Of a stretch of DNA of 64,000 nt, positions 1,456 through 63,812 are shown piece by piece (the stretch's first letter is position 1; each line of letters opens with the position of its first letter). Both the position numbers and the translations under genes were made by a program. The stretch covers positions 181,875 to 245,874 of IMG/VR virus record IMGVR_UViG_3300024520_000047; one strand, 5' to 3'. The notes under the pieces were generated by a model. The model made no database searches. It saw only the letters and a program-made list of their open reading frames with translations, and was not told where the DNA came from.

Positions 1456-1485
1456 ATAAATATTTACTATCTATTTAATATTTAT
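1456..1485. promoter_or_regulatory. Back-to-back putative late promoters (TATTTAT on each strand)
   Basis: ATAAATA at 1456-1462 serves the minus-strand gene; TATTTAT at 1479-1485 serves the plus-strand gene at 1501. Confidence 0.6.
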
Positions 1486-1500
1486 AGTAAAAACAAATAG

Positions 1501-2175
1501 ATGAAAGAATTAACACATGATGGTACTTGTAATAGGGTTCATCCCGATATTTCTCACGAAAAATGGGAAGAAAAAGAACAAAAAAAAGAAGAAACTAATG
1601 AAGAACAAGAATTAGATGAACTTGTTGATTATGATGGTTCACTATTAAGTTCTAAAATTCCTCTAGGGATTAATAAGACGAATAAAATAAGTAGAAGTAC
1701 TTCAGATGATGTTGTTAAAACCGCACACCAAAAAGGTAATGGTTTGGGGTATTACTATAAGCGTTACTGGGGGGAATCATATCTGGGTGGTGGATTAAGT
1801 GATGTTGAGGATATAGACACCATGTCAGCAGATGAAACAATTGACCATTTTGAAGATGAGTACGGATTAAGTCCATTAAGGGCACACGAAAAAGCGTCAG
1901 AATATGGTAAAATTGTAAATGGTAGTGAAGAAGATTTGCATGATGAGAAACAACGGATTGTAGAATTAGGTAATAATAAAATGAAAGATATGTTAGAAAT
2001 ATTATTAAGTAAGGACGCTAAAAATACAGAACGTGGGTTGGTAGACACGGATAAGCCTATAGAATTACACGATGAGAATAACGATAATCCCATACTAACT
2101 AAAATGGGTACTAAATTTAAACAAGCTTGTGATGCTCACGGAATTAATCCACAAGACATATTAAAAAATATATAA
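1501..2175 (+). CDS. Hypothetical acidic protein, probably late/virion-associated
   Basis: 224-aa ORF, first of a tightly packed plus-strand operon behind TATTTAT. Confidence 0.7.
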   Translation: MKELTHDGTCNRVHPDISHEKWEEKEQKKEETNEEQELDELVDYDGSLLSSKIPLGINKTNKISRSTSDDVVKTAHQKGNGLGYYYKRYWGESYLGGGLSDVEDIDTMSADETIDHFEDEYGLSPLRAHEKASEYGKIVNGSEEDLHDEKQRIVELGNNKMKDMLEILLSKDAKNTERGLVDTDKPIELHDENNDNPILTKMGTKFKQACDAHGINPQDILKNI

Positions 2176-2628
2176 ATGCCAGATAAAAATTTATATGATA
2201 GAACATTTGAGGTTCCTGATAAATGCATTGAACATATAAAAAATGCATTTACAAATTTTAATGGTCCAAAAACAACAGAAGGGTATGAACGTGCAAAAAA
2301 TATTTTAAAAAATCCAAATATTAGTTTACCCCTATTAAAAAAAATAAATAACTTTTTTAGAAATGAAGAAGAAGGGACTGCACCATATAATTTAACTGGT
2401 GGTGATTACGGTAAAAAAATATTTCAAAAAATGGAGGACCAAGTACGTAGAGGTGAGTCTTCTTCACGTAAAAATAAAATGAGAGGTGGTATGATGAATA
2501 CCCACTATAAAGAACATGAAAAGGACCAAAATGCTAACCCTACGGGTGTAAATGTCCCAAAAGTAGATAGCGTCCCCGCATTAATCGAACAAATAAAGAA
2601 AATTAAAAAACTTATAAACTATTTATAA
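2176..2628 (+). CDS. Hypothetical protein with C-terminal LIEQIKKIKKLINYL helix
   Basis: 150-aa ORF abutting upstream gene. Confidence 0.7.
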   Translation: MPDKNLYDRTFEVPDKCIEHIKNAFTNFNGPKTTEGYERAKNILKNPNISLPLLKKINNFFRNEEEGTAPYNLTGGDYGKKIFQKMEDQVRRGESSSRKNKMRGGMMNTHYKEHEKDQNANPTGVNVPKVDSVPALIEQIKKIKKLINYL

Positions 2629-2638
2629 AAAAAAAGTT

Positions 2639-2962
2639 ATGGCACAAGAACAACAAACAAATCCAGGTGAAAAAATGACAGAAGTTGCAAAAGCAGAAAG
2701 AGATAAGCTATTTCCAAAAAACGAGTATAGCCCAAAATCAGAATTTTATAGTCCCCAACACCCCAACGCTTTAGCGGATGGTGACGATAAAGGAAGAGGT
2801 ACTAGCGTATATTTAGGGGTACACGACACTAAAACCGGTACAAAACTAGATATTCTTACGAGAGATGATTTAGTAAAAACTAACGCTTACAACTCTAAAA
2901 ATAACTATTCTGTTCCTGACGATGAGGCTACAACAGGTACTGTTGGATTAACACCTTCTTAA
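2639..2962 (+). CDS. Hypothetical protein
   Basis: 107-aa ORF in operon, A-rich start context. Confidence 0.65.
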   Translation: MAQEQQTNPGEKMTEVAKAERDKLFPKNEYSPKSEFYSPQHPNALADGDDKGRGTSVYLGVHDTKTGTKLDILTRDDLVKTNAYNSKNNYSVPDDEATTGTVGLTPS

Positions 2963-2977
2963 TAAAGTTTTAAGAAA

Positions 2978-3340
2978 ATGAAACTTTACAACACCCTACA
3001 TTCACTTATATTAGAAGTAGCTTCTAGGGAAGACACCAAACAAGCTATTGAAAATAAATTAAGGACACTTATTTATTATGAAGGTGATACCGTTAATAAC
3101 CCAGGGTGGAGAACAATCGAACCAGTTTGTGCTGGGACAACAAAAAGAAATAATCCAGTTCTTAGAGCATGGCAAACAGAGGGGGCTACAGATACCGAAG
3201 TTCCTGGTTGGAAATTTTTTAGATTGGATAGGATTAGAAATTGGCAACCGACACTGGATGAGTTTACTGAAGCCCGTCCTGGTTACAACCCAAACGGCGA
3301 TAAAAGTATGAATCAAGTGTGGTTCAACGCAAAATTTTAA
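2978..3340 (+). CDS. Stand-alone WYL-domain-like protein
   Basis: RTIEP...LRAW...WKFFRLDRI matches the WYL signature (RxVxP...LxAx...RxFRxDRI); no HTH domain. Confidence 0.7.
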   Translation: MKLYNTLHSLILEVASREDTKQAIENKLRTLIYYEGDTVNNPGWRTIEPVCAGTTKRNNPVLRAWQTEGATDTEVPGWKFFRLDRIRNWQPTLDEFTEARPGYNPNGDKSMNQVWFNAKF

Positions 3341-3349
3341 TAAAAAGAA

Positions 3350-3970
3350 ATGGATAAACTACAACAATCTTTATTAAACGCTAAAAGATTTATGGAGCAC
3401 GATGCATTAAAAAGTGCCTCCCGAACAGCATCAACACCACGGACACAAGAACCTGAAATGGGTGAACCAATTATGGCTCACCAAGTACCAAATATGAATA
3501 TAAATGAAAGTAGTATTCCGTCAGCGGCACCAGAAATGACAATGGCACCGAAATCAAAAATGACTAAAGAATCTATTTTAAATTCCAAATTGCCCGACGC
3601 GATAAAACAAGCAATGTTAAGTAATCCAATACCTGACCCTATCCCAGATAACGCCTTATCACCCCAATTCATAAATGAAGTTAGTAAAAAAATGAATTCA
3701 CAAGACTACAGTATAAGTAATATGAGAGCAACGGCTAATTCAAACGTTAAAAAAGAAATCGTTGACCCCATACCGTCATTAATTCCAGACCCACCACCTA
3801 CCCCAGATTCAAGTTCTTTAAAAGAAACAATTAAAGAATGTTTAAAGGAAATTTTAGAAGAAGAAAATTTAATCGTTGAATCTAAAAATCTAAAAGAAAA
3901 TTTACAATTACGAGTAGGAAACAAAGTATTTACAGGAACTATTAAAAATGTAAAAACAATAAAAAAATAA
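3350..3970 (+). CDS. Hypothetical Pro/Met-rich protein
   Basis: 206-aa ORF, last gene before terminator; several LxE motifs near C-terminus. Confidence 0.7.
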   Translation: MDKLQQSLLNAKRFMEHDALKSASRTASTPRTQEPEMGEPIMAHQVPNMNINESSIPSAAPEMTMAPKSKMTKESILNSKLPDAIKQAMLSNPIPDPIPDNALSPQFINEVSKKMNSQDYSISNMRATANSNVKKEIVDPIPSLIPDPPPTPDSSSLKETIKECLKEILEEENLIVESKNLKENLQLRVGNKVFTGTIKNVKTIKK

Positions 3971-3994
3971 AATACGTTTAAATTTTGTGTTTTT

Positions 3995-4019
3995 ATGGGG
4001 ACTATTGGTCCCCATTTTT
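3995..4019 (+). terminator. Rho-independent terminator
   Basis: ATGGGGAC-TATTG-GTCCCCAT hairpin followed by T-run, after the 1501-3970 operon. Confidence 0.8.
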
Positions 4020-17192: not shown

Positions 17193-17195
17193 AAC

Positions 17196-18131: not shown

Positions 18132-18144
18132 TTAAATTAGTTAT

Positions 18145-20906: not shown

Positions 20907-21605
20907 GTGCCTAGACCTAAAAAAAATAAGATGTATTTTGGGGAACCCCAAGAACAGGCAGTACGTATGTTTTTAACTGCTCATACTTTTACTGAAAGAA
21001 ATAAAATTTATGTAGAGTATTTAAAGGACCCATTAAATAAAATGATAGATAGTATCATTAGAAGATACAAACTATATAGAAAAAATGAGGATTTTAGAGA
21101 TATCCACGCTGATGTCCTTTCATTTTTAATGACCAAAGCAGAAAAATTTAAACCAGAAAAAAATAAAAAAGCTTATTCATATTTTGGTACTATTTGTAAA
21201 AATTATTTAATGGGTCAAATAATAAAAGACCAAAAACTTCAAAATAGACATATTTCATATGAGGGGGTGTCCACTTTTTTGGAAAAAAGAGAAGACCTTA
21301 TTTATTATATGAATCAAGAACCGGCGGACCATAATAAAATTTTTGTTTCCCTGATTGATAAGATTGAATCTTTTATGTCAGAAACACTTTTAAATGAAAA
21401 TGAAATAAAAGTAGGAAGTGCTTTGATTGAAGTTTTCACAAATTATGATGAAATATTTATTCATGGTGATGGAAATAAATTTAATAAAAATTTAGTTCTA
21501 CTTAATTTAAGAGAGATGACAAATTTATCTACAAAAGAAATTAGAAATTCTCTTAAAAAATATAAAATGATATATAAGATTATATCTGAAGAACAATTAG
21601 ATTAA
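20907..21605 (+). CDS. Phage late sigma factor (T4 gp55-like), GTG start
   Basis: KFKPEKNKKAYSYFGTICKNYL resembles sigma region 2 of gp55-type factors; lacks region 4; immediately precedes structural genes. Confidence 0.65.
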   Translation: MPRPKKNKMYFGEPQEQAVRMFLTAHTFTERNKIYVEYLKDPLNKMIDSIIRRYKLYRKNEDFRDIHADVLSFLMTKAEKFKPEKNKKAYSYFGTICKNYLMGQIIKDQKLQNRHISYEGVSTFLEKREDLIYYMNQEPADHNKIFVSLIDKIESFMSETLLNENEIKVGSALIEVFTNYDEIFIHGDGNKFNKNLVLLNLREMTNLSTKEIRNSLKKYKMIYKIISEEQLD

Positions 21606-21649
21606 TAATCTTTAGCTACAGGTATTTATGGCTATAAAACTATGTAAAA

Positions 21650-25794: not shown

Positions 25795-25819
25795 ATATTT
25801 ATAATTAAAGAAAAAAGTA

Positions 25820-31493: not shown

Positions 31494-31596
31494 AGTGCTT
31501 TACTGTTATCAGTTTTTGCTAAGTTTATTTGTTAATAAATATTATGAAAGCTCTAAAAATTCTATTTTAGAGAGAATTGTCTAATAAAAATTGAAA

Positions 31597-32307: not shown

Positions 32308-32354
32308 ATTTTACTTTTAATATAAATAGTAAAATACTAATAAAACTTCTGGGA

Positions 32355-33848: not shown

Positions 33849-33874
33849 AATAATTGTTTGATAATAAATATCTA

Positions 33875-37727: not shown

Positions 37728-37769
37728 CTCTTTATAATAAATAGTGAAAAGACTTAAATGATTCTAATG

Positions 37770-42721: not shown

Positions 42722-42773
42722 ACTATAATCTATTTTTTATATAAATATTCGTTCTATGATAAAAAAAACCTAT

Positions 42774-43538: not shown

Positions 43539-43568
43539 AACAATAAATACTTCTTAATGATATTAAGA

Positions 43569-47953: not shown

Positions 47954-50341
47954 TTAGGCAATAACTGCTCCATATGAACCAGTAACTATCCAACCAGCAT
48001 CTGCATCCCAAAGTAAATCAATCGAATCTCCCGCATCTGTTAGTGTAAAACTACTATATGGGCTAGTCCACGTATTAATGGTCATGGAACCAGTAAGTGA
48101 ATCGTCATACACATAAATAGTCAATCTTTGTCCCTGACTACCATTAGGTAAAGACCCCGGAGCCGGGGACGAACCTATTTGTGCTATTCTCCAAATAGAT
48201 TTTTTACTTATAGAGGGTGAAACATCGGCATCTGTAGTTACTATCCCTGTTTTATGTATTTGAGCTTCTGCGATTAAAGTATCACCTATGTAAGTAGTAC
48301 TTAATGTAGTTACCCCTGTGCCCGTTAAATCACCATCAACAACAGCTTCAGGGCCTATTGTAACGGGTGAACAACCAGTTATGGTAGACACGTATAATGT
48401 TCCACCAAACTCACATAAATCTACATTGGGCATATAAACTGTATCGTCGGCATTTCCTGTAATGCCAAACCCACCAAGTACTGCACTTCTATCTCCATTG
48501 ACTATGGAGTTAAAAGAATGTGCAAATGAAGTTAAACCTGAAGCTGTGGAACCACTACCCCCCGCGTGGGAACCTGAACCAGCCGCTACAGTTTTAATAT
48601 TTTGAGCATGAGACGCGTCTCCTGACGCTATGGGCCCAATATCGGTTGGTCCTGGGATGCCTATCTCAATATTTGGTCCTCCTTCTGCATGTGCCCACTT
48701 ACCACTAGCAATTGTATTATGTCCTTGAGCGTGAGAACCATAATTACCACTTGCAATCGTATAACCACCTTCAGCGTGAGAACCTGTACCTGAGGCTAGA
48801 GTATTATATCCTTCAGCGTGACCTACTGCCTCTGTTGTTGCAGAGGTTTGGTATCCCTCAACGTGTGAATAATCAGCGTCTGCTGTAATAATTGTCTGAT
48901 ATCCTTCACCATGTGAATAATTACCTATAACTGTAGTGTAAAATCCTTCCGCGTGAGAATAATCACCATGAGCTTTTGTTCCTCTTCCTTCCGAGTGTGC
49001 TGTAACTCCAGTTGCTTCTGTTTGGAATCCTTGAGCGTGACAATAATATTTTGCTCCACTGCCCGCTAATGTCCCATATCCTTCTGCGTGAGACATATGA
49101 GTCATAGCAGATGTTTGGGCCCCTTCAGCGTGAGACCCAATACCTAAAGCATACCCACCAATATAGAGACTAGCCCCAGGAAGTATATAACCACCTTCAG
49201 CGTGAGAACAAGCTCCTATAGCTAGTGACCCATATCCTTCTGCGTGAGAAACTTGTCCACTAGCTAAGGTAAAACCACCTTCTGCGTGAGCACCCATTGT
49301 AGTTGCTGAAGTAGGTGCTATTGTAGGTAAGTCTCCAGTTTTTATTGAGCCACCTTCAGCGTGTGAAGCAGTACCACTTGCGAGATTCCCCCACCCTTCA
49401 GCGTGAGAATAGTTTTCTATTGCTCTTGTATAAGACCCTTCAGCATGGGACGACAGTCCACTAGAAATTGTAGTGTGTCCTTCAGCGTGTGAAGCTATAC
49501 CATACGCTTTAGTATCTATGCCTTCAGCGTGTGAACCATAACCTATCGCTGTCGTATCTTTACCTTCAGCGTGAGATGTGTCTCCAGTTGCCCACGAACT
49601 GTCTCCCTCCGCATGAGAATAGTTCCCTTCAGCTTGTGTACTTATACCTTCCGCATGTGAACTATTACCATATGCTTGAGTGTCTGTACCTTCAGCGTGT
49701 GAACCCTGTCCTGTTGCTATAACACCAGTTTTCCACCCATAACCTTCCGCGTGAGCACCTCTACCGATAGCTATATTAGTCGCCAACCCACCATCACTGT
49801 ACCCCTCAACGTGTGAACCATAACCTATCGCTGTCGTATCTTTACCTTCAGCATGAGATGAAGTTCCCGTCGCCCAAGTGTTTTCGCCTTTAGCGTGAGA
49901 ATAGTTCCCTTCAGCTAATGTGGTACTTCCCCACGCTATAGAATTAATGCCTGTTGCGGATGAAGTAATATGTTGGATAGGACTATGTTCTGTAACAGCA
50001 TCTAAACACGCGTATCTATTATTTATATATAAATTAGTTATACAACTACCACTTCCACCACTAAATACAGTATCTGCGGGGTCTAATAGACCAAACATTA
50101 TCGTATCTCCCGAAATAAAGGTTGTAATTCCGCTGGTTCCTTGAAGTCGTCTAAAATTTAATGCCCCATCATTAGGGTTAGCTGTCTTACTCACATAGAG
50201 ACCTATACCACCAGAACCTAGATTATTTCCAATGGTATTATCTATTTTTTGACTTAAAATACTAAGATTACCATCTAACTCACCATGAGTTAATGCGTTA
50301 CTTTGGCTTAATCTTAAATAAAATGGAATTGGTAATGGCAT
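47954..50341 (-). CDS. Tail fibre/adhesin with ~30 SHAEG beta-roll repeats
   Basis: 14-aa xxTxAxGxxSHAEG repeats (YadA-head-like); N-terminal LTHGELDGN; TATTTAT at 50359-50365. Confidence 0.75.
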   Translation of the reverse strand: MPLPIPFYLRLSQSNALTHGELDGNLSILSQKIDNTIGNNLGSGGIGLYVSKTANPNDGALNFRRLQGTSGITTFISGDTIMFGLLDPADTVFSGGSGSCITNLYINNRYACLDAVTEHSPIQHITSSATGINSIAWGSTTLAEGNYSHAKGENTWATGTSSHAEGKDTTAIGYGSHVEGYSDGGLATNIAIGRGAHAEGYGWKTGVIATGQGSHAEGTDTQAYGNSSHAEGISTQAEGNYSHAEGDSSWATGDTSHAEGKDTTAIGYGSHAEGIDTKAYGIASHAEGHTTISSGLSSHAEGSYTRAIENYSHAEGWGNLASGTASHAEGGSIKTGDLPTIAPTSATTMGAHAEGGFTLASGQVSHAEGYGSLAIGACSHAEGGYILPGASLYIGGYALGIGSHAEGAQTSAMTHMSHAEGYGTLAGSGAKYYCHAQGFQTEATGVTAHSEGRGTKAHGDYSHAEGFYTTVIGNYSHGEGYQTIITADADYSHVEGYQTSATTEAVGHAEGYNTLASGTGSHAEGGYTIASGNYGSHAQGHNTIASGKWAHAEGGPNIEIGIPGPTDIGPIASGDASHAQNIKTVAAGSGSHAGGSGSTASGLTSFAHSFNSIVNGDRSAVLGGFGITGNADDTVYMPNVDLCEFGGTLYVSTITGCSPVTIGPEAVVDGDLTGTGVTTLSTTYIGDTLIAEAQIHKTGIVTTDADVSPSISKKSIWRIAQIGSSPAPGSLPNGSQGQRLTIYVYDDSLTGSMTINTWTSPYSSFTLTDAGDSIDLLWDADAGWIVTGSYGAVIA

Positions 50342-50388
50342 ATCTACTTATTTACTATATAAATATCGCCAGTATAAAAAAGAGAAGT

Positions 50389-51251: not shown

Positions 51252-51398
51252 TTAATTAATAATTGTTTTAAGTTTAATTAATAATTGTTTTAATCTATTT
51301 TTATACCATTTTTTAGACCACCCATCTAAGTACCCATGCATTACCAATTCTGTTTTAACTTTAAGAATTTCTTCTTTTAATTTTTCTACTTTTTTCAT
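51252..51398 (-). CDS. Small 48-aa protein (below ORF-track cutoff)
   Basis: MKKVEKLKEEILKVKTELVMHGYLDGWSKKWYKNRLKQLLIKLKTIIN; TATTTAT at 51414-51420. Confidence 0.5.
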   Translation of the reverse strand: MKKVEKLKEEILKVKTELVMHGYLDGWSKKWYKNRLKQLLIKLKTIIN

Positions 51399-51442
51399 AA
51401 ACTCTTTTTTTAAATAAATATTTCATTTATATTTGTTTTCAT

Positions 51443-52988: not shown

Positions 52989-55271
52989 TTATTTTTTTCT
53001 ATTTCTTCGTTTATTTTGACGTGCTCTACGTTTTTCTTTTTTGGTTGGTTTTGGGTCTCCTTTTCCCGTCAATCCATATTCAGATTTAACTTTAGAACTT
53101 CCACCCCCAATAAAATTAAAGTCATCATAACAGTGAGATAAGGCTTGATATACATTTTTACCACCTTTTTTAGGTAATAATTCAGCACTATAACTAATTA
53201 AATCCTTACACCCTTCTTTTGTTGGTGCTAATTTAACCTCATCTTCTAATGTCTTCGTAATGTTTTTCATATCTTCTTGGGTCCCTTTAAATTCGGGTAC
53301 TTTAACTTCTTGATTGGAGGAAGCTACGTCCTCTTTAGGTGTGGACATTGCTTTTAACATAAAAGAAGCGGTTTCTGGGCCAATAACTCCGTCAACCTTT
53401 AATCCGTTAGTCGATTGATAATTTTTAACAGCAGTGTGGGTTGAATCATCAAATACGCCGCTTTCATTCATTCTTAAAAATTTCTGTATTCTATTGATTG
53501 ATGTCCCTTTTTGTCCTTTTTTAATTAATCCGTTTCCCGCTGCGGCATCTTCTAATGATGGAGCAGTGGTTGCACTTGGTGTAGATTTTTCTTTCTTTTC
53601 TTTACTACTACTATTGTCATCCCCACTTCTTCTTCTGCTAATTTTATGTCTGTCATCATCAGAGTCATATTTTACAGTATACTTACCTTCACTAACTAAT
53701 TGACTTTCATTTAAAACTTTTCTTAAATCATGAATAGACTCTTCTAATACCTCAAAATCATTAACCCCCATTGCCATAGATATCGCGGCACCTTGTATAA
53801 CACTTGGTTTTCTTTTTGCTGTATTTGGGTTATCCTCCACTAAATCATCTATATATTCATCAGCTGTTCCTTCAGGTCCTTCTATCATATCTAAGGTTTC
53901 ACCTTTTTCATAAACCACACCATTAACCTCTATATCATCACTTAAAGTCATTAAATCACTACCTTCGTCAGCCTTATTAAATATTTTCATTACTTTAGCT
54001 TTATCTTCATCATCTTCTATAACAAATGTTTCACCATCTAAAGTCCTAAAGTATACTTTATCTTCAGAATTTTCAATATATTCAAACATTCCCATATAAT
54101 CTTTACTACCAGCACCAAAAACTATTGCAGTATTAGACGCCCCTGCTGTGTCTACAAAGACATCCACAGTCTGACCACCAAAAAGAGTTTTAAATGTTAT
54201 TCGATAGGCTGGTAATCCTTCTGGTCTTTCAAATAAATCCTTAGACAGGTCTTCCATCTCTTTTTCTAAATCTTCTATAGTATAAATTCTTTTTCCGTTA
54301 ATTATACATAAAGGTTTATCTTGTAATATAGTTAAAATGGGTTGGAAATCTGATTCATTTAATTCGTCACCCAATTCTTCTATTAAAGAACCATATTTTA
54401 AATCATAGATTCCTGTTAAGTGAGAACAATCATATAATGTAGCTACATTTCTAAAGGCATTGTATATACTTTCTTCATCTGTACCCGCACCTTCAGTAGC
54501 ACCAAACGAAATAAAATCCACTAATCCTTTACCGAAATATTTTTCACCACCTTCTGTAGCGTCTTGAATCATGTCAGCTAACCCCGCTAATTGTGCTTCG
54601 CTTTGAAAGGTAAATGGGATTTCTTCAGTTAATCCCTGCTTTTCAGCTTCGTCATATACCGCAGGATTAAAAGCAATTGCTAATATGTCTTCTTGACTTA
54701 GTGTACCACCATTTGCCCATTGTTCCATGGATGCTGCCGCGTCTCCCGGTCCCTTTCCAGACATATTACTAGCTGCCAGATATCCTCCGCCCCCCAATAC
54801 GGTTAAAGCTTTTAACCCTCCTAAAACACGTGCATTTAAAATAGATTTACTTTGGGCGGCAGTTAATGTTTTTGCTCCACCGGGTAATTTTCCTAAACTT
54901 AATCCACCAGAAGCTATTTTACCAACATTCTTGGTCCCTAAACCAGCTTTAGCTAACCCACCTGTTGGTACTTTGGTAATCCCCCGCATAAATTTAGGTA
55001 AAACACGTGCTCCACCTCGTGCAATCCATGGTCCTAATCTTGCTAATCCACCTACAATAGCCCCCCAAAACTCTAGTTGTAATTCCCCATCAATTGGTGG
55101 TGTATCGGTGATAATTTCTTTGTTTTCTTTTATAACTTTAGGTTTTATTCTACTGTCATTGGTATTTCCCAACAATACCTTTTTAGTTTTTGATGGAAAA
55201 TCCTTACTGTAACTCTCCAAATAGACCATTTTTTTTAATTCTTCCTCAAGTGTTTTTTTTGGTTTTTTCAT
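52989..55271 (-). CDS. Multidomain virion protein: Gly-rich membrane helices, annexin repeat, peptidoglycan-binding domain
   Basis: GAGTDEESI...LGDEL annexin repeat; LIKKGQKG...VKNYQSTNGLKVDGVIGPET PG_binding_1 motif. Confidence 0.75.
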   Translation of the reverse strand: MKKPKKTLEEELKKMVYLESYSKDFPSKTKKVLLGNTNDSRIKPKVIKENKEIITDTPPIDGELQLEFWGAIVGGLARLGPWIARGGARVLPKFMRGITKVPTGGLAKAGLGTKNVGKIASGGLSLGKLPGGAKTLTAAQSKSILNARVLGGLKALTVLGGGGYLAASNMSGKGPGDAAASMEQWANGGTLSQEDILAIAFNPAVYDEAEKQGLTEEIPFTFQSEAQLAGLADMIQDATEGGEKYFGKGLVDFISFGATEGAGTDEESIYNAFRNVATLYDCSHLTGIYDLKYGSLIEELGDELNESDFQPILTILQDKPLCIINGKRIYTIEDLEKEMEDLSKDLFERPEGLPAYRITFKTLFGGQTVDVFVDTAGASNTAIVFGAGSKDYMGMFEYIENSEDKVYFRTLDGETFVIEDDEDKAKVMKIFNKADEGSDLMTLSDDIEVNGVVYEKGETLDMIEGPEGTADEYIDDLVEDNPNTAKRKPSVIQGAAISMAMGVNDFEVLEESIHDLRKVLNESQLVSEGKYTVKYDSDDDRHKISRRRSGDDNSSSKEKKEKSTPSATTAPSLEDAAAGNGLIKKGQKGTSINRIQKFLRMNESGVFDDSTHTAVKNYQSTNGLKVDGVIGPETASFMLKAMSTPKEDVASSNQEVKVPEFKGTQEDMKNITKTLEDEVKLAPTKEGCKDLISYSAELLPKKGGKNVYQALSHCYDDFNFIGGGSSKVKSEYGLTGKGDPKPTKKEKRRARQNKRRNRKK

Positions 55272-55314
55272 TATTATTCTTTTTTTTATAAATATATTAT
55301 TTTTTCTTTAAAGT

Positions 55315-56261: not shown

Positions 56262-56561
56262 TTAACCATTCATTTTAACATCAACAGTGACTGTTACACC
56301 GACTTTACCATCATTTGTCTTCCACTTCCATGTTTTCTTTAGCTTATCGTCTTCTAAGGTTTCAGTCATACTTTTATTACGAAGACTAAAAGCTCCTTTA
56401 GTTGCTTCCAAATGACCAACAACATCCTTAAAAGTTTTTTCTGCTGATGGATGTGATTTTGTTGGTGTTGGTTCGTCTTGTTTTTCTTCTTGTTCCTTTA
56501 AAGTCGTTTCTATTACTTTAATTAATTCACTTTCAGTAAGTCTAATTGTTTTATTTTTCAT
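56262..56561 (-). CDS. Small protein with RLTESELIKVI leader
   Basis: 99-aa ORF in operon. Confidence 0.65.
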   Translation of the reverse strand: MKNKTIRLTESELIKVIETTLKEQEEKQDEPTPTKSHPSAEKTFKDVVGHLEATKGAFSLRNKSMTETLEDDKLKKTWKWKTNDGKVGVTVTVDVKMNG

Positions 56562-56878
56562 AATGTTACTTTATCGTTTATCCATTCTTTCAGATATTCC
56601 TTTGATACCTGAGTAATTTTTTTATTTATTGTTGGGGACAAGTAATCTTCCTCATCCGACATCTCACAAACAGCTTCACTTATTAATTCTTTTTGAAATT
56701 TTTCTTTTATAAGACTAATAGAATTATAAACCTTGAAACCGTTATGCTCATATAAAAAATCTAGGTAATTAAAAATTTTTTCACGCAAGGCTTGTTCTGG
56801 TATTGATTCATATCTTTCATTTAAAATATCATTTACAATACTATTTAAATAATAGTTAAGCCTAAATTTTTTACCCAT
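56558..56878 (-). CDS. Hypothetical late protein
   Basis: Start moved from 57052 to 56878 (MGKKFRLNYY): TATTTAT at 56895-56901, and the longer frame overlaps the plus-strand lipoprotein. Confidence 0.6.
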   Translation of the reverse strand: MGKKFRLNYYLNSIVNDILNERYESIPEQALREKIFNYLDFLYEHNGFKVYNSISLIKEKFQKELISEAVCEMSDEEDYLSPTINKKITQVSKEYLKEWINDKVTL

Positions 56879-56901
56879 GACTTTATTTTTATTAATAAAT
56901 A

Positions 56902-56933
56902 TTTGTAAAGGTGCTAATAATTTATTACTTTTG
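56902..56933 (+). promoter_or_regulatory. Bacteroidota sigma-A type promoter
   Basis: TTTG-N20-TACTTTTG. Confidence 0.75.
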
Positions 56934-56960
56934 TAGTATAAACTAAAAAAACCCATAACA

Positions 56961-57866
56961 ATGAAAAATATATTAACTACAGTACTTTTAATTATATGTA
57001 TCTTATCATTTAATAGTTGTAAGAAATATGAATTTGATGAGCCGTTGCCCACTATTGAGAATAATGAATGGATATTACAAAGTGGTAGGGTTTACGTGGA
57101 AAATTTAGATAATGGTGAACTTAAATATTATGACCATTTTGGTCCTAATAGAACTACTAGTAATTTAGACATTTTTGGTGGTTCACAGAGTGATATAGAT
57201 AATATTAACATTTCTCAAACCTCTTGGTATTTTTCAGATGGTAATTTTATTTTAGATAACTCGGTTTATTATGGATATACATCTATGGGTAGTGGTATAA
57301 ATGTGCAATATACAATAATTGGAGTGCCACCATTTGGGTCTTCACGTAATATTGGTGTTTTAGAATTAAACGACAATATTCTTACTATTATTGTATATGA
57401 ATCTAATGAATCCCATAATGGGGTTAACTACCATTATTTTTCTACATTAACATTTAAACGTATAGGTACAACGTGTTCTACATGCACTACAGAATCAATA
57501 AATGGTTATACGTATTCTGGTATCGTGGGTACAGTTATAGAAGAACCCACCACTTTAGATGGTACTTCGTGGATAATTACTCGTTATGATGAAGGAATGG
57601 CACCATATTACCCTAATGATACACTAACATTTATAAGTCAGGTGGTTTATACCTTAAATAATACTGGCGGATATACTTATTCCCTATCTAATATCGCTGG
57701 TAACAACATGCATAGTTTAACATTATATGATTGTACCACTTTTGGTGGTAACTATAGTGGTCAATTATCTCTTTCATTTATTGAAGCTGGAGAAATTAAT
57801 AATGTGACTATGACTGGTGTGTTTGGCACAAACGGTACTATCCAAGTGTGGATGGAGAAATTATAA
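56961..57866 (+). CDS. Lipoprotein with two beta-rich (lipocalin-like) domains
   Basis: Signal peptide II ending FNS-C followed by KKYEFDE (K/D/E-rich Bacteroidota lipoprotein export signal). Confidence 0.75.
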   Translation: MKNILTTVLLIICILSFNSCKKYEFDEPLPTIENNEWILQSGRVYVENLDNGELKYYDHFGPNRTTSNLDIFGGSQSDIDNINISQTSWYFSDGNFILDNSVYYGYTSMGSGINVQYTIIGVPPFGSSRNIGVLELNDNILTIIVYESNESHNGVNYHYFSTLTFKRIGTTCSTCTTESINGYTYSGIVGTVIEEPTTLDGTSWIITRYDEGMAPYYPNDTLTFISQVVYTLNNTGGYTYSLSNIAGNNMHSLTLYDCTTFGGNYSGQLSLSFIEAGEINNVTMTGVFGTNGTIQVWMEKL

Positions 57867-58112: not shown

Positions 58113-59126
58113 ATGAAAAAGAAGGAATTAAAAGCTAACCACCCCGAGTTGGACATACATTTAGTTGACGTACTTAATCTTTTAGACCCATCTCAAACTA
58201 ACAAATACACCCAATTTTTAATTAAAGAATTTAAAAAAATTTATTCTAATTTCGAAAAATCAGAAAGGATACATCCAACCCTACACACCCCAACCATAGG
58301 TAAACTTTTTAAAAGTGGTTCAGTTTTAGAACACCACATTCTAGATTTTATTATTGAAATTTTAGGTAAAGAAAATATACACGCTTTAATAGATTTTAAT
58401 ACACATTTAGAAAATAAAAGAACTCAAATTACCGATATATCTAAACTGGAATCTTTTGGTGATGTACATGAACAACTTGTACTAGCAGAATTAAAATATA
58501 GTAATAATAAAATTAAAAAAGAAGTTAGTACGTTATACGACGATGGTGTGTGGTTAATAATAAAACCATTAACTTATGAATCCTCTAAAGTTTATGGTGC
58601 TTCTACCAAATGGTGTACGTCACAACGAGATAACCCACGACCATTTTATGAATACTCTAAAGAAGGCATATTTTTATATATTATTAATAGAGTAACAAAT
58701 AAAAAAATTGCAGTTAACTGGACTATTGATGGTTCACATATAGAGTTATCGTGGTGGGATGAGGTAGATAATCGGTTAGATTCAATGCAAACTCAACTAC
58801 CAAAACACATACTAGAAAAAATAAAAGAATTACTAAAAAGTGAAAACTTACCTAACCATAATTTTTTTAATAAAAAAGAAAAAAATAAATGTGAAGATGT
58901 TTTAAATAAATATAGTTCTGTAATACCGTCACCAGACGCGTGGGCTGTGTATAATCGTAATACTGAAACAAATGACTGGTATTCTATGAGTGATGGTAAT
59001 AATTGGACTATTAGTGATGAATCAGATGTACACTCTATGGGTGTAGATGAAGTTATTAATAAAACTTTAGAATATAATTACACCTATAAATCACTTAAAA
59101 AGTCATTAGAGGATTTAAACGATTAA
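58113..59126 (+). CDS. Hypothetical protein with YGxxTKWC motif (PcfJ-like fold possible)
   Basis: IKPLTYESSKVYGASTKWCTS...FYEY...LYII, a motif frequent in large-phage proteins. Confidence 0.5.
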   Translation: MKKKELKANHPELDIHLVDVLNLLDPSQTNKYTQFLIKEFKKIYSNFEKSERIHPTLHTPTIGKLFKSGSVLEHHILDFIIEILGKENIHALIDFNTHLENKRTQITDISKLESFGDVHEQLVLAELKYSNNKIKKEVSTLYDDGVWLIIKPLTYESSKVYGASTKWCTSQRDNPRPFYEYSKEGIFLYIINRVTNKKIAVNWTIDGSHIELSWWDEVDNRLDSMQTQLPKHILEKIKELLKSENLPNHNFFNKKEKNKCEDVLNKYSSVIPSPDAWAVYNRNTETNDWYSMSDGNNWTISDESDVHSMGVDEVINKTLEYNYTYKSLKKSLEDLND

Positions 59127-61624
59127 CCCCAATAATGTTTATATGTATTCTCGTTTAAGGGTTCTGGGGTATCTATAGGGTTACTTTCAAACCCCACTTC
59201 TTTAGTAGAAAAAGGACTTTGTCCTTCATTTTTAAAAATTAATACCTCACCTTTATTACTAGGCCCAAACACAAAATAATCTACATTAGATGGATTATAA
59301 TACTTTAACCCGGTAGACTTAACAACGTGTTGATTTTTTCTTTTATAAAAACCATATAGGGGTTTGGCTTGGTACGTATGCATCTTACCACTCTCTTTAT
59401 TTTTAACCTCAATATCAACCCCGCTCACCGCATCTCGTCTTAAACCAGGATTTGCCTTCCAAATAACTTCATACCCATCTCCGTACCAGTCTTTTAAATA
59501 GTTCGACGCTCCAGTTTCATTTTTAATTCCGTACCCCCACGTACTATGATTTGCAGCTGTTAATTTTTTAAGAGTATCACTATTAGGGTGAAATAAATCC
59601 TTTTTATTGTAATATATAAAATCCACAAATTCATCTATATTAAAATTAAGGGGTAAATTATTCTGAGTTAAATACGATTCATAACTCTCAAGTAATATAT
59701 TTCTAACTACTGGATTAGTGTTAAAAAAATTCAGTATAGACCACCCATAATCACTTCCTTTGGCTACTTCAAAATTTAGAATTCCTTCCATGTGCTCATC
59801 GGTTGGCTTACCCCAACTATGATTAATATTTAGGTCCTTATCCTTGTATATTTCTTTTAAAGAATTATCAATAACTTCTTTAACTTTCCCCATCCAAGTT
59901 TTAGGTCCTCTATGTTTCCATTGGTAGTCACTTTTTATGGTATCTAATTTAAAATTATCTGGAATAAGGTGTTGGAGTGTTGGTCTTGTTTCTTTATTTA
60001 ATACAACATATAACCCCCCTCTTTTAGAGGTTCTAAAATTTCCTGCTTGTACTTCAGCCCATTTATTTGGGTCATCTTCATTTCTTAATGTAATGAATTG
60101 TGTGTCTGGGTCAGGTAGACCGGAAGTACCATTAAAAAATAAAATATGGTTAAATTTTCCACTCCCTAAAGCAGCCTTTTTGTACGTAATTTCTTTATAT
60201 TCTTCTTCTTTCAATATATTTTCTTTTGTTTCTGTAGGTGGTCCTAGTTTACGGTAAACATCCACATCTGGTAATAAGGGCATATTTTTAAATTGTTCGT
60301 TTTCTGGGTCGATAATCCACCTTACAAGGATTTTTTCACCCAATGCAGGCATACTCTCAAAACCCATAACAACACCCTTAGTTGCAACGGGAATGGGGTT
60401 CCATGGGTCTTCCATGTGAAGTAATTGAATGACATCTCCTATCTCTACTGGGGGGTTAGTACCCTTACTTTCATTAAGTCTTCTACGCTCTTGGGCATCT
60501 TCTAAAAACTTTCCACTTAAAATAAATGTATATAAACGACGAGCAATAGATTTAAAAACAGCATTAACATTTTCCATTGACATGTCACCATCTGAATTTT
60601 CTATTGTACTTAATGCACTCCGTGTCAATGCGTCTCTCACACTTTGGGCATTTTCCCATAAATAAAGTAAATCTTCATTTCCATATTCATGAAAAAATTT
60701 ATCGTAATCTGGGGGAAAGGCATTATTTTCTTCGGCCCATCTTAATATTTCCCCCGCGTATTCTCCCTTTAAATTAGATTCAGCGTCAGTTAAAAATGGA
60801 GATAAATCAGTCATGATTGGATTATAACGGCCCCAACTTCTAAGTCTCTCTACAAAATCGGCCACCAATATTCGGTCATTTCCTCTAAGGGCTTTTAATA
60901 AATCCACATTACCTAATAATCTTTCCATATCATCAGCCATTGCTTCTTTTAATATTCTACTTTCGTCTACTTCCCCTCGTCCCGATGATTTTAAATTATA
61001 CCCATCATCTGGATTATCAGTTAAATTAATTTTTTCTAAATGCCTTGGAGTTAATAATTCTTCTACCGGTATACCTGCACTTTTTAACTCCATCATAAAA
61101 TTATATAATGTGTTATAATCTTTTTTAAGATTTTCGTCGAGACATTTACCCACACAATCTGGGTCTATACCGTAGTCACCACAATAACATCGGAATTCCA
61201 TTACAATATCATAAAAAACGTCGAATAATAAAATTGCAAATACCCAGTCTAGGTGAACACCCTTTAATATTTGTAATTTATTATCTAATGTTGGGTAAAA
61301 TTCGAAAAACTTAGAACTACGTTGGTGGAATCCTTGTGCCTCCCTTGAAGTGGCAGGTGGGATATCACCTAATATTTCTGAAAAGTCAGGAGTTTCAAAA
61401 TCGGGATTAAGTAGCCCTAGCTTGGTCCCTTCTTTTACCGCGTCATCTAGAATGTATAGGGCATCATCAAAATTTGCTGAGGGGTCAGTAAAACTTTCCG
61501 CGTAAGTACTGGGGTGGTAAGTTTTATATAATTGTCTATATAAATTACCCTTATGTGGTTTCCAAAATTTCTTTAAAAAATATTTGAAGGGTTCTATGGG
61601 TGGTAGTGTCTCGTATTCTTCCAT
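59123..61624 (-). CDS. Multidomain protein with DUF4314-like and C-terminal PD-(D/E)XK nuclease-like domains
   Basis: GDVIQLLHMEDPWNPIPVATKGVV (DUF4314-like); E...D...GVD...TYQAK nuclease-like motif; domains separated by ILKE/LNE. Confidence 0.6.
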   Translation of the reverse strand: MEEYETLPPIEPFKYFLKKFWKPHKGNLYRQLYKTYHPSTYAESFTDPSANFDDALYILDDAVKEGTKLGLLNPDFETPDFSEILGDIPPATSREAQGFHQRSSKFFEFYPTLDNKLQILKGVHLDWVFAILLFDVFYDIVMEFRCYCGDYGIDPDCVGKCLDENLKKDYNTLYNFMMELKSAGIPVEELLTPRHLEKINLTDNPDDGYNLKSSGRGEVDESRILKEAMADDMERLLGNVDLLKALRGNDRILVADFVERLRSWGRYNPIMTDLSPFLTDAESNLKGEYAGEILRWAEENNAFPPDYDKFFHEYGNEDLLYLWENAQSVRDALTRSALSTIENSDGDMSMENVNAVFKSIARRLYTFILSGKFLEDAQERRRLNESKGTNPPVEIGDVIQLLHMEDPWNPIPVATKGVVMGFESMPALGEKILVRWIIDPENEQFKNMPLLPDVDVYRKLGPPTETKENILKEEEYKEITYKKAALGSGKFNHILFFNGTSGLPDPDTQFITLRNEDDPNKWAEVQAGNFRTSKRGGLYVVLNKETRPTLQHLIPDNFKLDTIKSDYQWKHRGPKTWMGKVKEVIDNSLKEIYKDKDLNINHSWGKPTDEHMEGILNFEVAKGSDYGWSILNFFNTNPVVRNILLESYESYLTQNNLPLNFNIDEFVDFIYYNKKDLFHPNSDTLKKLTAANHSTWGYGIKNETGASNYLKDWYGDGYEVIWKANPGLRRDAVSGVDIEVKNKESGKMHTYQAKPLYGFYKRKNQHVVKSTGLKYYNPSNVDYFVFGPSNKGEVLIFKNEGQSPFSTKEVGFESNPIDTPEPLNENTYKHYWG

Positions 61625-61675
61625 CTTCTATAAATAGTTATAGACTTATTTAAAAAAATATAGTATCTTATTCAT

Positions 61676-62534: not shown

Positions 62535-62538
62535 AATA

Positions 62539-62569
62539 CAAAGATAAACAAAAAAAATTAAACTACAAA
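62539..62569 (-). promoter_or_regulatory. Bacteroidota sigma-A type promoter
   Basis: TTTG-N19-TATCTTTG on minus strand. Confidence 0.8.
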
Positions 62570-62587
62570 ATTAAATGAAAAATATTT

Positions 62588-62893
62588 TTAAAAATCGTCT
62601 TCGTTAAATGGGTTCATTTGACTTTTAAGTTGGACCATTATCTTAGAATAGTCATTCATGGGACCCACGAAATCATTTCTTACCTTACCTAATTCGTGTT
62701 TCAACCTATCTTGTACCAGTATTCCCTCAACTAATGAAGAAAACACATCCATCGAATCTCTAAATTTCATATAATTTTCGAATAGGGTCTTCATCATGGC
62801 TTCCTCATCCTGTGCTCCTATATTTGGGTCGTCATACCCACCCACCTCATTAAGTAGTTTTTGATATTGTGAATTATTTAATTTAACTTTCAT
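62588..62893 (-). CDS. Hypothetical late protein with KVKLNNSQYQKLLNE leader
   Basis: 101 aa; TATTTAT at 62898-62904. Confidence 0.65.
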   Translation of the reverse strand: MKVKLNNSQYQKLLNEVGGYDDPNIGAQDEEAMMKTLFENYMKFRDSMDVFSSLVEGILVQDRLKHELGKVRNDFVGPMNDYSKIMVQLKSQMNPFNEDDF

Positions 62894-62918
62894 AATAATA
62901 AATATATCTTAAAATTGT

Positions 62919-62950
62919 TTTGGTAATTACAATATTTTTATTTATCTTTG
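62919..62950 (+). promoter_or_regulatory. Bacteroidota sigma-A type promoter
   Basis: TTTG-N20-TATCTTTG, 4 nt before ATG 62955. Confidence 0.8.
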
Positions 62951-62954
62951 TATT

Positions 62955-63410
62955 ATGAAAAGATTACCAAAGAAAATACAAAAAATAATTAAAAGAGAAA
63001 GATTTACTCTGGATACCACCACACCCAATGACCGTTACACAAAGGGGGTTAAAGTCACCTATCGTATTAGTGGAATTACAACTGCTGACGCAAAATGGTT
63101 TAAGGAAAGTACACCAATGGATAAAAATTTGTGTCAGGATATTTGGGTGAATATAAAAGTAAGTGGGGTGGCTGAGACTGGTAACTATCAAGACTTAGAA
63201 AAGAAGCTACGGCCTATCGGTGATGTAGCAAAATGTAAAAGAAGTTCTAGATGGGGGTATAATTCTTTATGGGGTTACCAATACCACAAAAAAATTAGAG
63301 TACACCTTCGCCGTCACACTAAATCTGAAATTGAGAATTTTCTAAAACTAGTTGGGATTCAGGCCCAAGGATGGGTTAATTTAAAAATTAAAACTATCGG
63401 GTGGGAATAG
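62955..63410 (+). CDS. Hypothetical basic protein
   Basis: 151-aa ORF with its own host-type promoter. Confidence 0.65.
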   Translation: MKRLPKKIQKIIKRERFTLDTTTPNDRYTKGVKVTYRISGITTADAKWFKESTPMDKNLCQDIWVNIKVSGVAETGNYQDLEKKLRPIGDVAKCKRSSRWGYNSLWGYQYHKKIRVHLRRHTKSEIENFLKLVGIQAQGWVNLKIKTIGWE

Positions 63411-63411
63411 A

Positions 63412-63759
63412 TTAACGATTCTTTTTAATGTAAGACATTCTATCTTCCATTTCATTTACATCTTGAACAAACTTGTGAACCTGCTCTTCATCTATAAACT
63501 TACTAACTTCATTTAAGTGGTCAACCACCAAACCATGTCTATCATCTGATAAGGCGTGGTTTTCTGGTTGCATCTTTAATTGACCTTGTTGTGAACTTAG
63601 AGTACCCTGCATTCTCCACTCATTTAGTGAAGTTTTTTCTTCCTCAGTATGAAGATTTCTAATTCGTTTAGTTTCAGCAGAAGAGTTATTATAATGTCTG
63701 GGGTCTTCTTTCCTTCTATTATATTTGTGCCCTTCCCAACGTGGATGATTTAAGTTCAT
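63412..63759 (-). CDS. Hypothetical late protein
   Basis: 115 aa; TATTTAT at 63771-63777. Confidence 0.6.
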   Translation of the reverse strand: MNLNHPRWEGHKYNRRKEDPRHYNNSSAETKRIRNLHTEEEKTSLNEWRMQGTLSSQQGQLKMQPENHALSDDRHGLVVDHLNEVSKFIDEEQVHKFVQDVNEMEDRMSYIKKNR

Positions 63760-63812
63760 AGTTTTTATATATAAATAGTGACAAAACCGTTAAAATTGTT
63801 TACATTTATTAA

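What the first reader, a model, noticed from the sequence alone, without database searches (positions are those of the whole stretch)
1456..63777. Late-promoter motif TATTTAT, the reverse complement of the T4 late promoter core
Seen: TATTTAT on the sense strand 4-41 nt before the ATG of at least 16 structural or putative late genes on both strands (1456, 1479, 21623, 25796, 31535, 32322, 33864, 37737, 42741, 43543, 50359, 51414, 55288, 56895, 61630, 62898, 63771). Accessory genes instead carry TTTG-N19/20-TAnnTTTG. Known: T4 gp55 recognises TATAAATA on the sense strand. Inference: the gp55-like sigma at 20907 has a new specificity. Gaps of only 4-5 nt imply near-leaderless late mRNAs. The genome is AT-rich, so enrichment needs formal testing.
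Basis: partly seen in the sequence, partly recalled or inferred. Interest (0 to 1): 0.62.

Follow-up and report, generated by a model that had tools for sequence, protein, structure and literature searches.

The report
Conserved TATTTAT late-type phage promoter
An uncultured 246-kb T4-related jumbo phage, probably of marine Bacteroidota, carries an almost invariant TATTTAT box just upstream of its virion genes; it looks like a one-element promoter read by a phage sigma factor, often placed so that the mRNA would start at the AUG.

Summary
All 17 listed sites exist in the sense orientation. In the window, sense TATTTAT occurs 19 times in the 50 nt before start codons, against 3.8±2.1 in shuffles. 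In the whole 245,874-bp genome it occurs 52 times against 10.7±3.2. The antisense form is not enriched. The box is conserved upstream of orthologous genes in hundreds of metagenomic relatives while the flanks diverge. It has no upstream partner element. It is followed by conserved A's 5-7 nt downstream, and it lies either 4-5 nt or about 11-16 nt from the ATG. I read it as a single-element, -10-like promoter with a start site 5-6 nt downstream, leaderless in about a third of cases. It drives head, tail, packaging and lysis genes. The window's 232-aa protein (20907-21605) is a sigma-region-2 protein whose best structural match is T4 gp55, so it is the most likely reader. That link is unproven, because a second phage sigma (regions 2 and 4) lies outside the window. 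"Reverse complement of T4" is a coincidence: in the same orientation the box differs from T4's TATAAAT at two central bases. The genome also has Bacteroidota-type host promoters and a TTGACA-type class. No transcript data could be obtained.

The parts
1456..1462 (-). TATTTAT box, 5 nt before the ATG of the 1090-aa gene whose 5' part is window 2..1450 (leaderless geometry)
1479..1485 (+). TATTTAT box, 15 nt before the ATG at 1501; divergent partner of the box at 1456
2620..2626 (+).
20907..21605 (+). 232-aa sigma-like protein: a region-2 domain most like T4 gp55, plus an extra C-terminal helical domain; candidate reader of the box
   Evidence: Pfam Sigma70_r2 E 8.6e-4, below cut-off. Family profile against PDB: SigA region 2 E 2.6e-3, T4 gp55 E 0.084. 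AF2 model pLDDT 90.7. Best structural match T4 gp55 7d7d_F, Z 10.5, 118 residues aligned. hhalign against T4 gp55 E 1.7e-4.
21623..21629 (+). TATTTAT box between the sigma gene and the next gene (ATG at 21650, gap 20); its position is conserved in 71 of 74 relatives
21650..22018 (+). Conserved 122-aa helical-hairpin protein that always follows the sigma gene and is always led by the box; function unknown
25796..25802 (+). TATTTAT box, 17 nt before the ATG at 25820
31535..31541 (-). TATTTAT box, 41 nt before the ATG at 31493; heads the two-gene unit ending with the major capsid gene 27974..29770
32322..32328 (-). TATTTAT box, 14 nt before the head maturation protease gene 31597..32307
33864..33870 (-). 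TATTTAT box, 15 nt before the ATG at 33848
36032..36038 (-).
37737..37743 (-). TATTTAT box, 9 nt before the large terminase gene 36009..37727; conserved in relatives with 63-90% identical terminase while the flanks diverge
42741..42747 (-). TATTTAT box, 19 nt before the ATG at 42721
43543..43549 (-). TATTTAT box, 4 nt before the ATG at 43538 (leaderless geometry)
50359..50365 (-). TATTTAT box, 17 nt before the 795-aa YadA-head-repeat (fibre-like) gene 47954..50341
51414..51420 (-). TATTTAT box, 15 nt before a 49-codon ORF (51252..51398); weakest gene assignment
55288..55294 (-). TATTTAT box, 16 nt before the 760-aa peptidoglycan-binding, endolysin-like gene 52989..55271
56895..56901 (-). TATTTAT box, 16 nt before the ATG at 56878 (an internal ATG of ORF 56558..57052, likely the true start)
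61630..61636 (-). TATTTAT box, 5 nt before the 833-aa gene 59123..61624 (leaderless geometry)
62898..62904 (-). TATTTAT box, 4 nt before the ATG at 62893 (leaderless geometry)
63771..63777 (-). TATTTAT box, 11 nt before the ATG at 63759

Best explanation
TATTTAT, with extended consensus (A/G)-A-TATTTAT-W-N3-A-W-R, is the single, -10-like promoter element of a phage-specific transcription class in a T4-related jumbo phage lineage that infects Bacteroidota. Host core RNA polymerase carrying a phage sigma opens the DNA at the box and starts at an A 5-6 nt downstream of it. The most likely sigma is the gp55-like protein encoded at window 20907-21605. No -35/-33 element is used, as at T4 late promoters. 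In about a third of the promoters the initiating A is the A of the ATG, which gives leaderless mRNAs. In most others the leader is only about 6-12 nt, which fits a host that does not use Shine-Dalgarno pairing. The class drives head, tail, packaging and lysis genes, so it is probably late. Host-type TTTG-N19-21-TAnnTTTG promoters serve accessory and early genes. A third class, TTGAC(A/T)-N16-19-TAnnnT, precedes the DNA polymerase, DnaK and ClpB genes. Shown here: enrichment, orientation, spacing, conservation, lack of an upstream element, and the sigma fold. Inferred: that the box is a promoter, the start site, the timing, and which sigma reads it.
For: Enrichment and strand specificity. The heptamer is nearly invariant: there are 50 exact copies in the -30..-11 zone, against at most 10 for any one-mismatch variant in a similar zone. 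Phylogenetic footprints: the box is kept upstream of the terminase gene in relatives with 63-90% identical terminase while flanks diverge. It is kept between the sigma gene and the next gene in 71 of 74 loci whose sigma is 56-68% identical. It is also present in contigs of 32-33% identical homologs (L178, L181). The same positional peak appears in three groups of relatives. Pooled over 474 sites there is no information upstream of position -2, and TTTG at a -33-like distance occurs in 22 of 474 sites against 29 of 474 in a control window. Spacing over 2256 upstream regions is bimodal: 94 sites at gap 4, 28 at gap 5, and a second mode at 11-16. In 341 leadered sites, A stands at +5, +6 and +7 after the box in 80, 75 and 85%. 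This is the place taken by the A of ATG in the short-gap class. Host-type promoters in the same genome show the same 4-nt gap in 7 of 14 cases. In Flavobacterium the TAnnTTTG box lies at -12..-5 (PMC9723704), which puts +1 on that A. The box sits mainly at heads of transcription units: 48 of 119 genes with at least 20 nt of upstream spacer have it, against 11 of 134 tightly packed genes. Genes served. Sigma evidence. No phage RNA polymerase was found. Host phylum: Bacteroidota-type promoters, SD-like 4-mers before only 7 of 253 genes, and a similar lineage predicted on Flavobacteriia (PMC12619734).
Against: There are no transcript 5' ends and no timing data, because no RNA run was listed. A second phage sigma with regions 2 and 4 exists and co-occurs with the box in relatives, so assigning the box to the gp55-like protein rests only on the one-element architecture. 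The similarity to gp55 is weak in sequence (hhalign probability 50%). The protein also has an unexplained C-terminal domain that aligns loosely with region 4 of full-length sigmas. No gp33, gp45 or gp44 homolog was found; the record is only about 77% complete. The box also precedes a DnaB-like helicase and a polynucleotide kinase. Gene starts come from a simple longest-ORF rule, so individual gaps may be off.
Confidence: 0.6

Rival explanations
1. The box is a promoter element, but it is read by the other phage sigma (genome 79688-80482, 264 aa, regions 2 and 4), or by both sigmas in turn. The gp55-like protein would then have another target or another role.
For: The second sigma matches Pfam region 2 (E 1e-15) and region 4 (E 5.8e-14). 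It is present in 4 of 5 large relatives that also use the box. Presence or absence therefore cannot separate the two sigmas.
Against: A sigma with region 4 is expected to use a two-part promoter, and the box has no upstream partner. The genome has a separate two-part class, TTGAC-N16-19-TAnnnT (9 promoter-sense copies, 0 in the other orientation, 0.8 expected), that would suit this sigma. The gp55-like gene is physically tied to a box-led gene in 71 of 74 relatives.
Confidence: 0.2
2. The box is a variant host promoter. It would be read by host sigma-A or a host alternative sigma without any phage sigma, possibly after modification of the host enzyme by a phage factor.
For: With a 5-nt gap the box lies at -12..-6. 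It then shares T-12, A-11, T-8 and T-6 with the Bacteroidota TAnnTTTG box at -12..-5.
Against: G at the position after the box is rare (4%), where host promoters have a conserved G. There is no TTTG at -33. The host-type class is distinct and serves other genes. Two phage sigmas are conserved in the lineage.
Confidence: 0.08
3. The box acts at the RNA level. UAUUUAU would be an AU-rich translation enhancer, for example for ribosomal protein S1, or a processing site in an organism without Shine-Dalgarno pairing.
For: The box lies close to start codons. The host group does not use SD sequences (PMC9723704).
Against: It is absent from most tightly packed internal genes. Its distance to the ATG varies from 4 to more than 40 nt, while the A-rich signal 5-7 nt after it stays fixed relative to the box, not to the ATG. 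It is an exact heptamer rather than a compositional bias.
Confidence: 0.07
4. Chance: the copies are a by-product of AT-rich intergenic DNA.
For: The genome has 33% G+C, and the total count of the heptamer in the window equals expectation.
Against: Observed 52 against 10.7 +/- 3.2 (max 23) in shuffled upstream regions. There is strict orientation bias and conservation in diverged relatives.
Confidence: 0.01

Closest known systems
T4 late promoters (TATAAATA at -13..-6) read by gp55 with gp33 and the gp45 sliding clamp
   Same: Both are a single AT-rich -10-like element with no -35 partner. Both are almost invariant and sit in front of virion genes of a T4-related myovirus (terminase of the gp17 family). 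Here a phage protein has a sigma region-2 domain whose best structural match is gp55. In the same orientation, 5 of 7 bases are identical (TAT-AA-AT against TAT-TT-AT).
   Different: The two central bases differ, and the T4 box itself is not enriched here. The box lies 1-2 nt closer to the inferred start. The sigma is 232 aa with an extra C-terminal domain, against 185 aa for gp55. No gp33, gp45 or gp44 homolog was detected. The host is Bacteroidota, not Enterobacteria. Many promoters have a leaderless layout.
Bacteroidota sigma-A promoters (TTTG at -33, TAnnTTTG at -12..-5)
   Same: The distance to the start and to the ATG is the same. The TA and two of the T positions are shared. Both classes in this genome include leaderless arrangements with a 4-nt gap.
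   Different: The box has no -33 element, A instead of T at -7, and no G at -5. The two classes serve different sets of genes.
Sigma cascades of large phages that use host RNA polymerase (Bacillus phage SPO1 gp28, then gp33/gp34)
   Same: There are several phage-encoded sigma-family proteins and several promoter classes in one genome. Here these are host sigma-A plus two phage sigmas, and three statistically supported promoter classes.
   Different: The order of use and the pairing of sigma to class are not established here. The motifs are unrelated to those of SPO1. The comparison to SPO1 rests on my own knowledge of that system, not on a test made here.
'Moraphages', large aquatic phages predicted on Flavobacteriia (PMC12619734)
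   Same: Both are jumbo phages related to T4 and Lak phages. Both have DnaK and a Clp-type ATPase and count sigma factors among core genes. Both have a predicted Bacteroidota host (DnaK and ClpB).
   Different: Membership of this genome in that lineage was not tested by phylogeny. The text of that paper holds no analysis of moraphage promoters; its single use of the word 'promoter' is in another context.

Membership tests
T4-type late transcription system (gp55 / gp33 / gp45) | A gp55-type sigma: a region-2 homology domain that binds the clamp helices, with no region 4 | tested here: inconclusive
   Residues 9-132 match T4 gp55 best (7d7d_F, Z 10.5, 118 aligned). hhalign E 1.7e-4, probability 50%. 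PDB profile search E 0.084. About 100 extra C-terminal residues align loosely with the C-terminal parts of full-length sigmas.
T4-type late transcription system (gp55 / gp33 / gp45) | Promoter consists of TATAAATA alone, centred near -10 | tested here: not met
   TATAAATA is not enriched upstream of genes (10 against 7.9 +/- 2.7). The enriched box is TATTTAT. The one-element architecture is shared.
T4-type late transcription system (gp55 / gp33 / gp45) | A gp33 co-activator | tested here: not met
   T4 gp33 finds no match in the record. The sigma-adjacent 122-aa protein is unrelated to gp33 by hhalign (probability 0.1%) and has a different predicted fold. The sequence search is weak for such small proteins, and the record is about 77% complete.
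T4-type late transcription system (gp55 / gp33 / gp45) | A gp45 sliding clamp and gp44/62 loader that couple late transcription to replication | tested here: not met
   No match to Pfam PF02916, to T4 gp45 or to T4 gp44. A distant or unrelated clamp, or one in the missing ~23% of the genome, is not excluded.
Sigma-70 family | A region-2 fold with the conserved 2.2-2.4 segment | tested here: met
   Pfam Sigma70_r2 gives a sub-threshold hit (19.5 bits). A family profile hits SigA region 2 of three solved holoenzymes (E 2.6e-3 to 9.4e-3). Nearly all top structural matches are sigma domain 2.
Bacteroidota sigma-A promoters | TTTG at -33 and TAnnTTTG at -12..-5 | tested here: not met
   The TATTTAT sites lack TTTG at the -33-like distance (22 of 474 against 29 of 474 in a control window) and lack the G after the box (4%). 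A separate set of sites in the same genome does meet the definition.
Leaderless mRNAs | A primary 5' end at the A of the start codon | not testable with these tools
   Only geometry is available: a sharp mode of 4-5 nt between box and ATG. No RNA run was listed.

The most novel reading that the evidence does not exclude
A whole uncultured lineage of jumbo phages of marine and freshwater Bacteroidota would run a three-sigma programme: host sigma-A, then a phage sigma with regions 2 and 4, then a gp55-like sigma. In this reading the gp55-like factor has gained a C-terminal domain that replaces the gp33/clamp co-activators of T4. It reads a new heptamer, TATTTAT, placed so that a large share of late mRNAs are leaderless. 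That would be a late-gene strategy adapted to a host without Shine-Dalgarno translation.
Probability: 0.3. Interest if true: 0.7.

Novelty: new variant of a known kind. Interest (0 to 1): 0.55.

Why it matters
This would give the first promoter map for a widespread but uncultured group of jumbo phages of Bacteroidota. The sigma family has more than 8000 scored matches in the 90%-identity protein clusters and none among 50,697 phage records in GenBank. A near-invariant heptamer with fixed geometry lets one annotate transcription units and gene starts in these genomes. It also offers a testable case of how gp55-type sigmas change specificity. It suggests that leaderless mRNAs are used systematically by phages of hosts that lack Shine-Dalgarno pairing. 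The box together with its sigma could become an orthogonal expression switch for Flavobacteriia, where genetic tools are scarce.

Tried and rejected
1. Megablast of 24 kb of the window against phage records gave no match.
2. tblastn of the sigma against phage records gave no match.
3. The search for RNA sequencing runs listed none, so read laying was not used and no start site could be mapped.
4. I looked for a phage RNA polymerase as an alternative reader of the box. PHROG and Pfam scans of large and giant ORFs and a search for a DxDGD-type catalytic motif found nothing.
5. Host inference from the GDP-mannose dehydratase gene was uninformative. The best matches were about 55% identical and spread over many phyla.
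6. Distant sigma homologs (32-33% identical) were looked up for a changed motif, but their contigs are only 1-3 kb. A scan of viral contigs with one of them returned only members of the main family, and a scan with another returned nothing.
7. The 122-aa protein next to the sigma gene was tested as a gp33 analogue. It shows no sequence relation and no informative fold match; it is a helical hairpin.
8. The promoter upstream of either sigma gene could not be classed. The gp55-like gene overlaps the stop codon of the preceding gene in all relatives. The other sigma gene has no conserved upstream motif.
9. The generic sigma-70 consensus scan is not enriched in the window. Only the stricter TTGAC-N16-19-TAnnnT pattern in intergenic DNA is enriched.

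Full report
CONTEXT. The window is the last 64 kb of a single 245,874-bp virus record with 33% G+C. The record is 96% coding under the standard code and is estimated about 77% complete. The large terminase belongs to the T4 gp17 family. Its closest cultured relative is only 27% identical, a Flavobacterium phage. The window encodes the major capsid protein, the portal, the terminase and a head protease. It also encodes DnaK, ClpB, a fibre-like protein and a peptidoglycan-binding protein. A cluster of sugar-nucleotide and glycosyltransferase genes is present, as is one tRNA-Arg. Outside the window lie a tail sheath, a baseplate wedge protein, a family-B DNA polymerase, a ribonucleotide reductase and an SbcC-like protein. 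No phage RNA polymerase was found. A 2025 paper describes a similar lineage, the 'moraphages'. These are predicted to infect Flavobacteriia, carry DnaK and have sigma factors among their core genes. The paper contains no promoter analysis (PMC12619734).

THE OBSERVATION. All 17 coordinates hold TATTTAT on the strand of a downstream ATG, with 4-41 nt between. The heptamer is not over-represented overall (61 copies against 59 expected). Its placement is what stands out.
- Genome-wide, 50 copies start at -30..-11 from start codons in the sense orientation. That compares with 15 antisense and 1-5 per 10-nt bin further upstream.
- In -40..-1 there are 52 copies against 10.7±3.2 in 1000 dinucleotide-preserving shuffles (max 23). 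The antisense form is at expectation, 23 against 16.5±3.9.
- In the window alone the figures are 19 against 3.8±2.1.
- In true intergenic DNA, 46 copies point toward a gene and 10 do not.
- Inside genes there is no strand bias.
- Single-mismatch variants are rare: at most 10 each, against 50 exact copies in the -30..-11 zone.

CONSERVATION. Upstream of the terminase gene the box is kept in IMG/VR relatives whose terminase is 63-90% identical, while the surrounding spacer is freely diverged. The positional peak recurs in three groups of relatives, including those with 61-62% identical terminase. In 71 of 74 distinct loci that carry a 56-68% identical homolog of the window's sigma-like gene, the box lies between that gene and the next one, usually exactly 4 nt before the ATG. 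It is also present after the sigma gene in two short contigs of 32-33% identical homologs.

ANATOMY. Pooling 474 distinct sites shows no information upstream of position -2. There is no TTTG at a -33-like distance: 22 of 474 sites, against 29 of 474 in a control window. The base before the box is A in 67% and almost never T. The base after it is A or T, and G in only 4%.

Over 2256 upstream regions of relatives, the distance to the start codon is bimodal. There is a sharp mode at 4 nt (94 sites) and 5 nt (28 sites), and a broad mode at 11-16 nt. In this genome the counts are 6 and 10 sites at 4 and 5 nt. In 341 sites with longer gaps, A stands at the 5th, 6th and 7th base after the box in 80, 75 and 85%. 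The A of the ATG occupies this same place in the short-gap class.

The box sits mainly at the heads of transcription units: 48 of 119 genes with at least 20 nt of spacer have it, against 11 of 134 tightly packed genes.

READING. These features fit a one-element, -10-like promoter with a start site 5-6 nt downstream. They do not fit an RNA-level signal. The host-type promoters of the same genome give an internal calibration. There are 13 full TTTG-N17-21-TAnnTTTG matches in promoter-sense spacers, none in the other orientation, and 0.2 expected. Seven of the 14 that lie just upstream of a gene end exactly 4 nt before the ATG. In Flavobacterium psychrophilum the TAnnTTTG box lies at -12..-5 (PMC9723704), which puts +1 on the A of those ATGs. 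TATTTAT with a 5-nt gap then occupies -12..-6. The short-gap class is therefore best read as leaderless, not 'near-leaderless'.

SD-like 4-mers precede only 7 of 253 genes. Together with the -33/-7 promoters and the literature on the related lineage, this points to a Bacteroidota host. The same F. psychrophilum study states that translation initiation in this group does not rely on Shine-Dalgarno sequences, and found 5.5% leaderless mRNAs.

WHICH GENES. The box directly precedes, or heads the unit of, these genes:
- the head protease, the capsid operon, the portal operon and the terminase;
- a fibre-like protein and a peptidoglycan-binding protein;
- the tail sheath, the baseplate wedge unit and a head-tail adaptor-like protein.

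The DNA polymerase, ribonucleotide reductase, SbcC, DnaK and ClpB genes lack it, as does most of the sugar gene block. There are exceptions: a DnaB-like helicase and a polynucleotide kinase have a box. 'Late' is thus a reasonable label, but it rests on gene content only.

WHO READS IT. The 232-aa protein at 20907-21605 has only a sub-threshold Pfam region-2 hit and no match in phage records. More than 8000 scored matches turned up in the 90%-identity clusters of public metagenomes, several named hits being from Tara, some on contigs of 260-310 kb. Clustered at 50% identity, 1159 clusters match. A profile of the family hits region 2 of solved SigA chains (E 2.6e-3) and T4 gp55 (E 0.084). A confident model (pLDDT 90.7) has T4 gp55 in its transcription activation complex as its best structural match (Z 10.5, 118 residues), followed by many sigma domain-2 structures. 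hhalign against T4 gp55 gives E 1.7e-4, better than against the genome's other sigma (E 2.6e-3).

gp55 reads a single -10-like element in the open complex (PMC7892883), which matches the one-element box. However, the protein has about 100 extra C-terminal residues that align loosely with the C-terminal parts of full-length sigmas. No gp33, gp45 or gp44 homolog was found. A second phage sigma with clear regions 2 and 4 lies at genome 79688-80482 and co-occurs in 4 of 5 large relatives.

A third promoter class, TTGAC(A/T)-N16-19-TAnnnT, has 9 promoter-sense copies, none in the other orientation, and 0.8 expected. It precedes the DNA polymerase, DnaK, ClpB and other genes. The tidy pairing is host sigma-A with the -33/-7 class, the two-domain phage sigma with the two-part TTGACA class, and the gp55-like sigma with the one-part TATTTAT class. 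This pairing is inference.

RELATION TO T4. The reverse complement of TATTTAT is indeed ATAAATA. Because the signal is strictly strand-specific, this has no mechanistic meaning. In the same orientation the box differs from T4's TATAAAT only at the two central bases, and it lies 1-2 nt nearer the inferred start. T4's own box is not enriched here. It is equally close to the host -7 box, with TA and two T positions shared. This parallels how T4's box resembles the E. coli -10 element; that last remark rests on established knowledge, not on a test made here.

VERDICT. This is a new variant of a known kind: a phage late-type promoter with a phage sigma. It is well supported by statistics and by comparison with relatives, but it lacks transcript evidence.

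LIMITS. Gene starts come from a longest-ORF rule. No RNA data could be obtained. The record is incomplete.

Noticed in passing
outside the window: genome 79688-80482 (-), locus L085:7688-8482: A second phage sigma factor of 264 aa, with Pfam region 2 (E 1e-15) and region 4 (E 5.8e-14). It is present in 4 of 5 large relatives. Its target promoter is unknown.
   Followed up: partly
window 4022-4050 (+), 32835-32807 (-), 45791-45764 (-), 45721-45749 (+): A third promoter-like class, TTGAC(A/T)-N16-19-TAnnnT. It lies upstream of the genes at 4078 and 32786, of DnaK and of ClpB. Elsewhere in the genome it precedes the DNA polymerase gene. There are 9 promoter-sense intergenic copies, 0 in the other orientation, and 0.8 expected.
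   Followed up: partly
window 27375-27406 (+), 51246-51215 (-), 56902-56933 (+), 62919-62950 (+), 62569-62539 (-): Bacteroidota-type promoters, TTTG-N19-21-TA(T/C)CTTTG. Three of them end exactly 4 nt before the ATG, so some host-type transcripts would also be leaderless.
   Followed up: partly
whole genome: There are almost no Shine-Dalgarno-like sequences. SD-like 4-mers occur in -20..-4 of only 7 of 253 genes, fewer than in a control window further upstream (14). An A-rich tract lies at -14..-10.
   Followed up: yes
window 21650-22018 (+): A conserved 122-aa protein always follows the gp55-like sigma gene. It has a basic N-terminus (PRPKKK, as at the sigma's own N-terminus), a long helical hairpin and an acidic tail. 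It is unrelated to T4 gp33 by sequence and has no informative fold match. It could be a transcription co-factor.
   Followed up: partly
window 43862-45727 (-) and 45814-47949 (+): DnaK (Hsp70) and a ClpB-type double-AAA ATPase are encoded divergently from one 86-nt spacer. The DnaK is 61-66% identical to those of 0.6-0.7 Mb uncultured phages.
   Followed up: no
window 16164-20905 (+): A sugar-nucleotide gene set lies directly upstream of, and translationally coupled to, the sigma gene. It comprises a GDP-mannose 4,6-dehydratase, an NAD-dependent epimerase and a family-2 glycosyltransferase.
   Followed up: no
window 43838-43860 and 27933-27949: G+C-rich hairpins with T runs on both strands look like bidirectional terminators. 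One follows DnaK. The other lies between the convergent capsid gene and the gene at 27433-27927.
   Followed up: no
window 51443-51517 (+): A tRNA-Arg (anticodon TCT) lies in a 900-nt stretch with only very short ORFs.
   Followed up: no
outside the window: genome 5366-14485, 19995-27368, 103211-112516 (all -): Three giant ORFs of 3040, 2458 and 3102 codons have no Pfam domain apart from a weak HD hit. The 2458-codon ORF is led by a TATTTAT box 5 nt from its ATG.
   Followed up: partly
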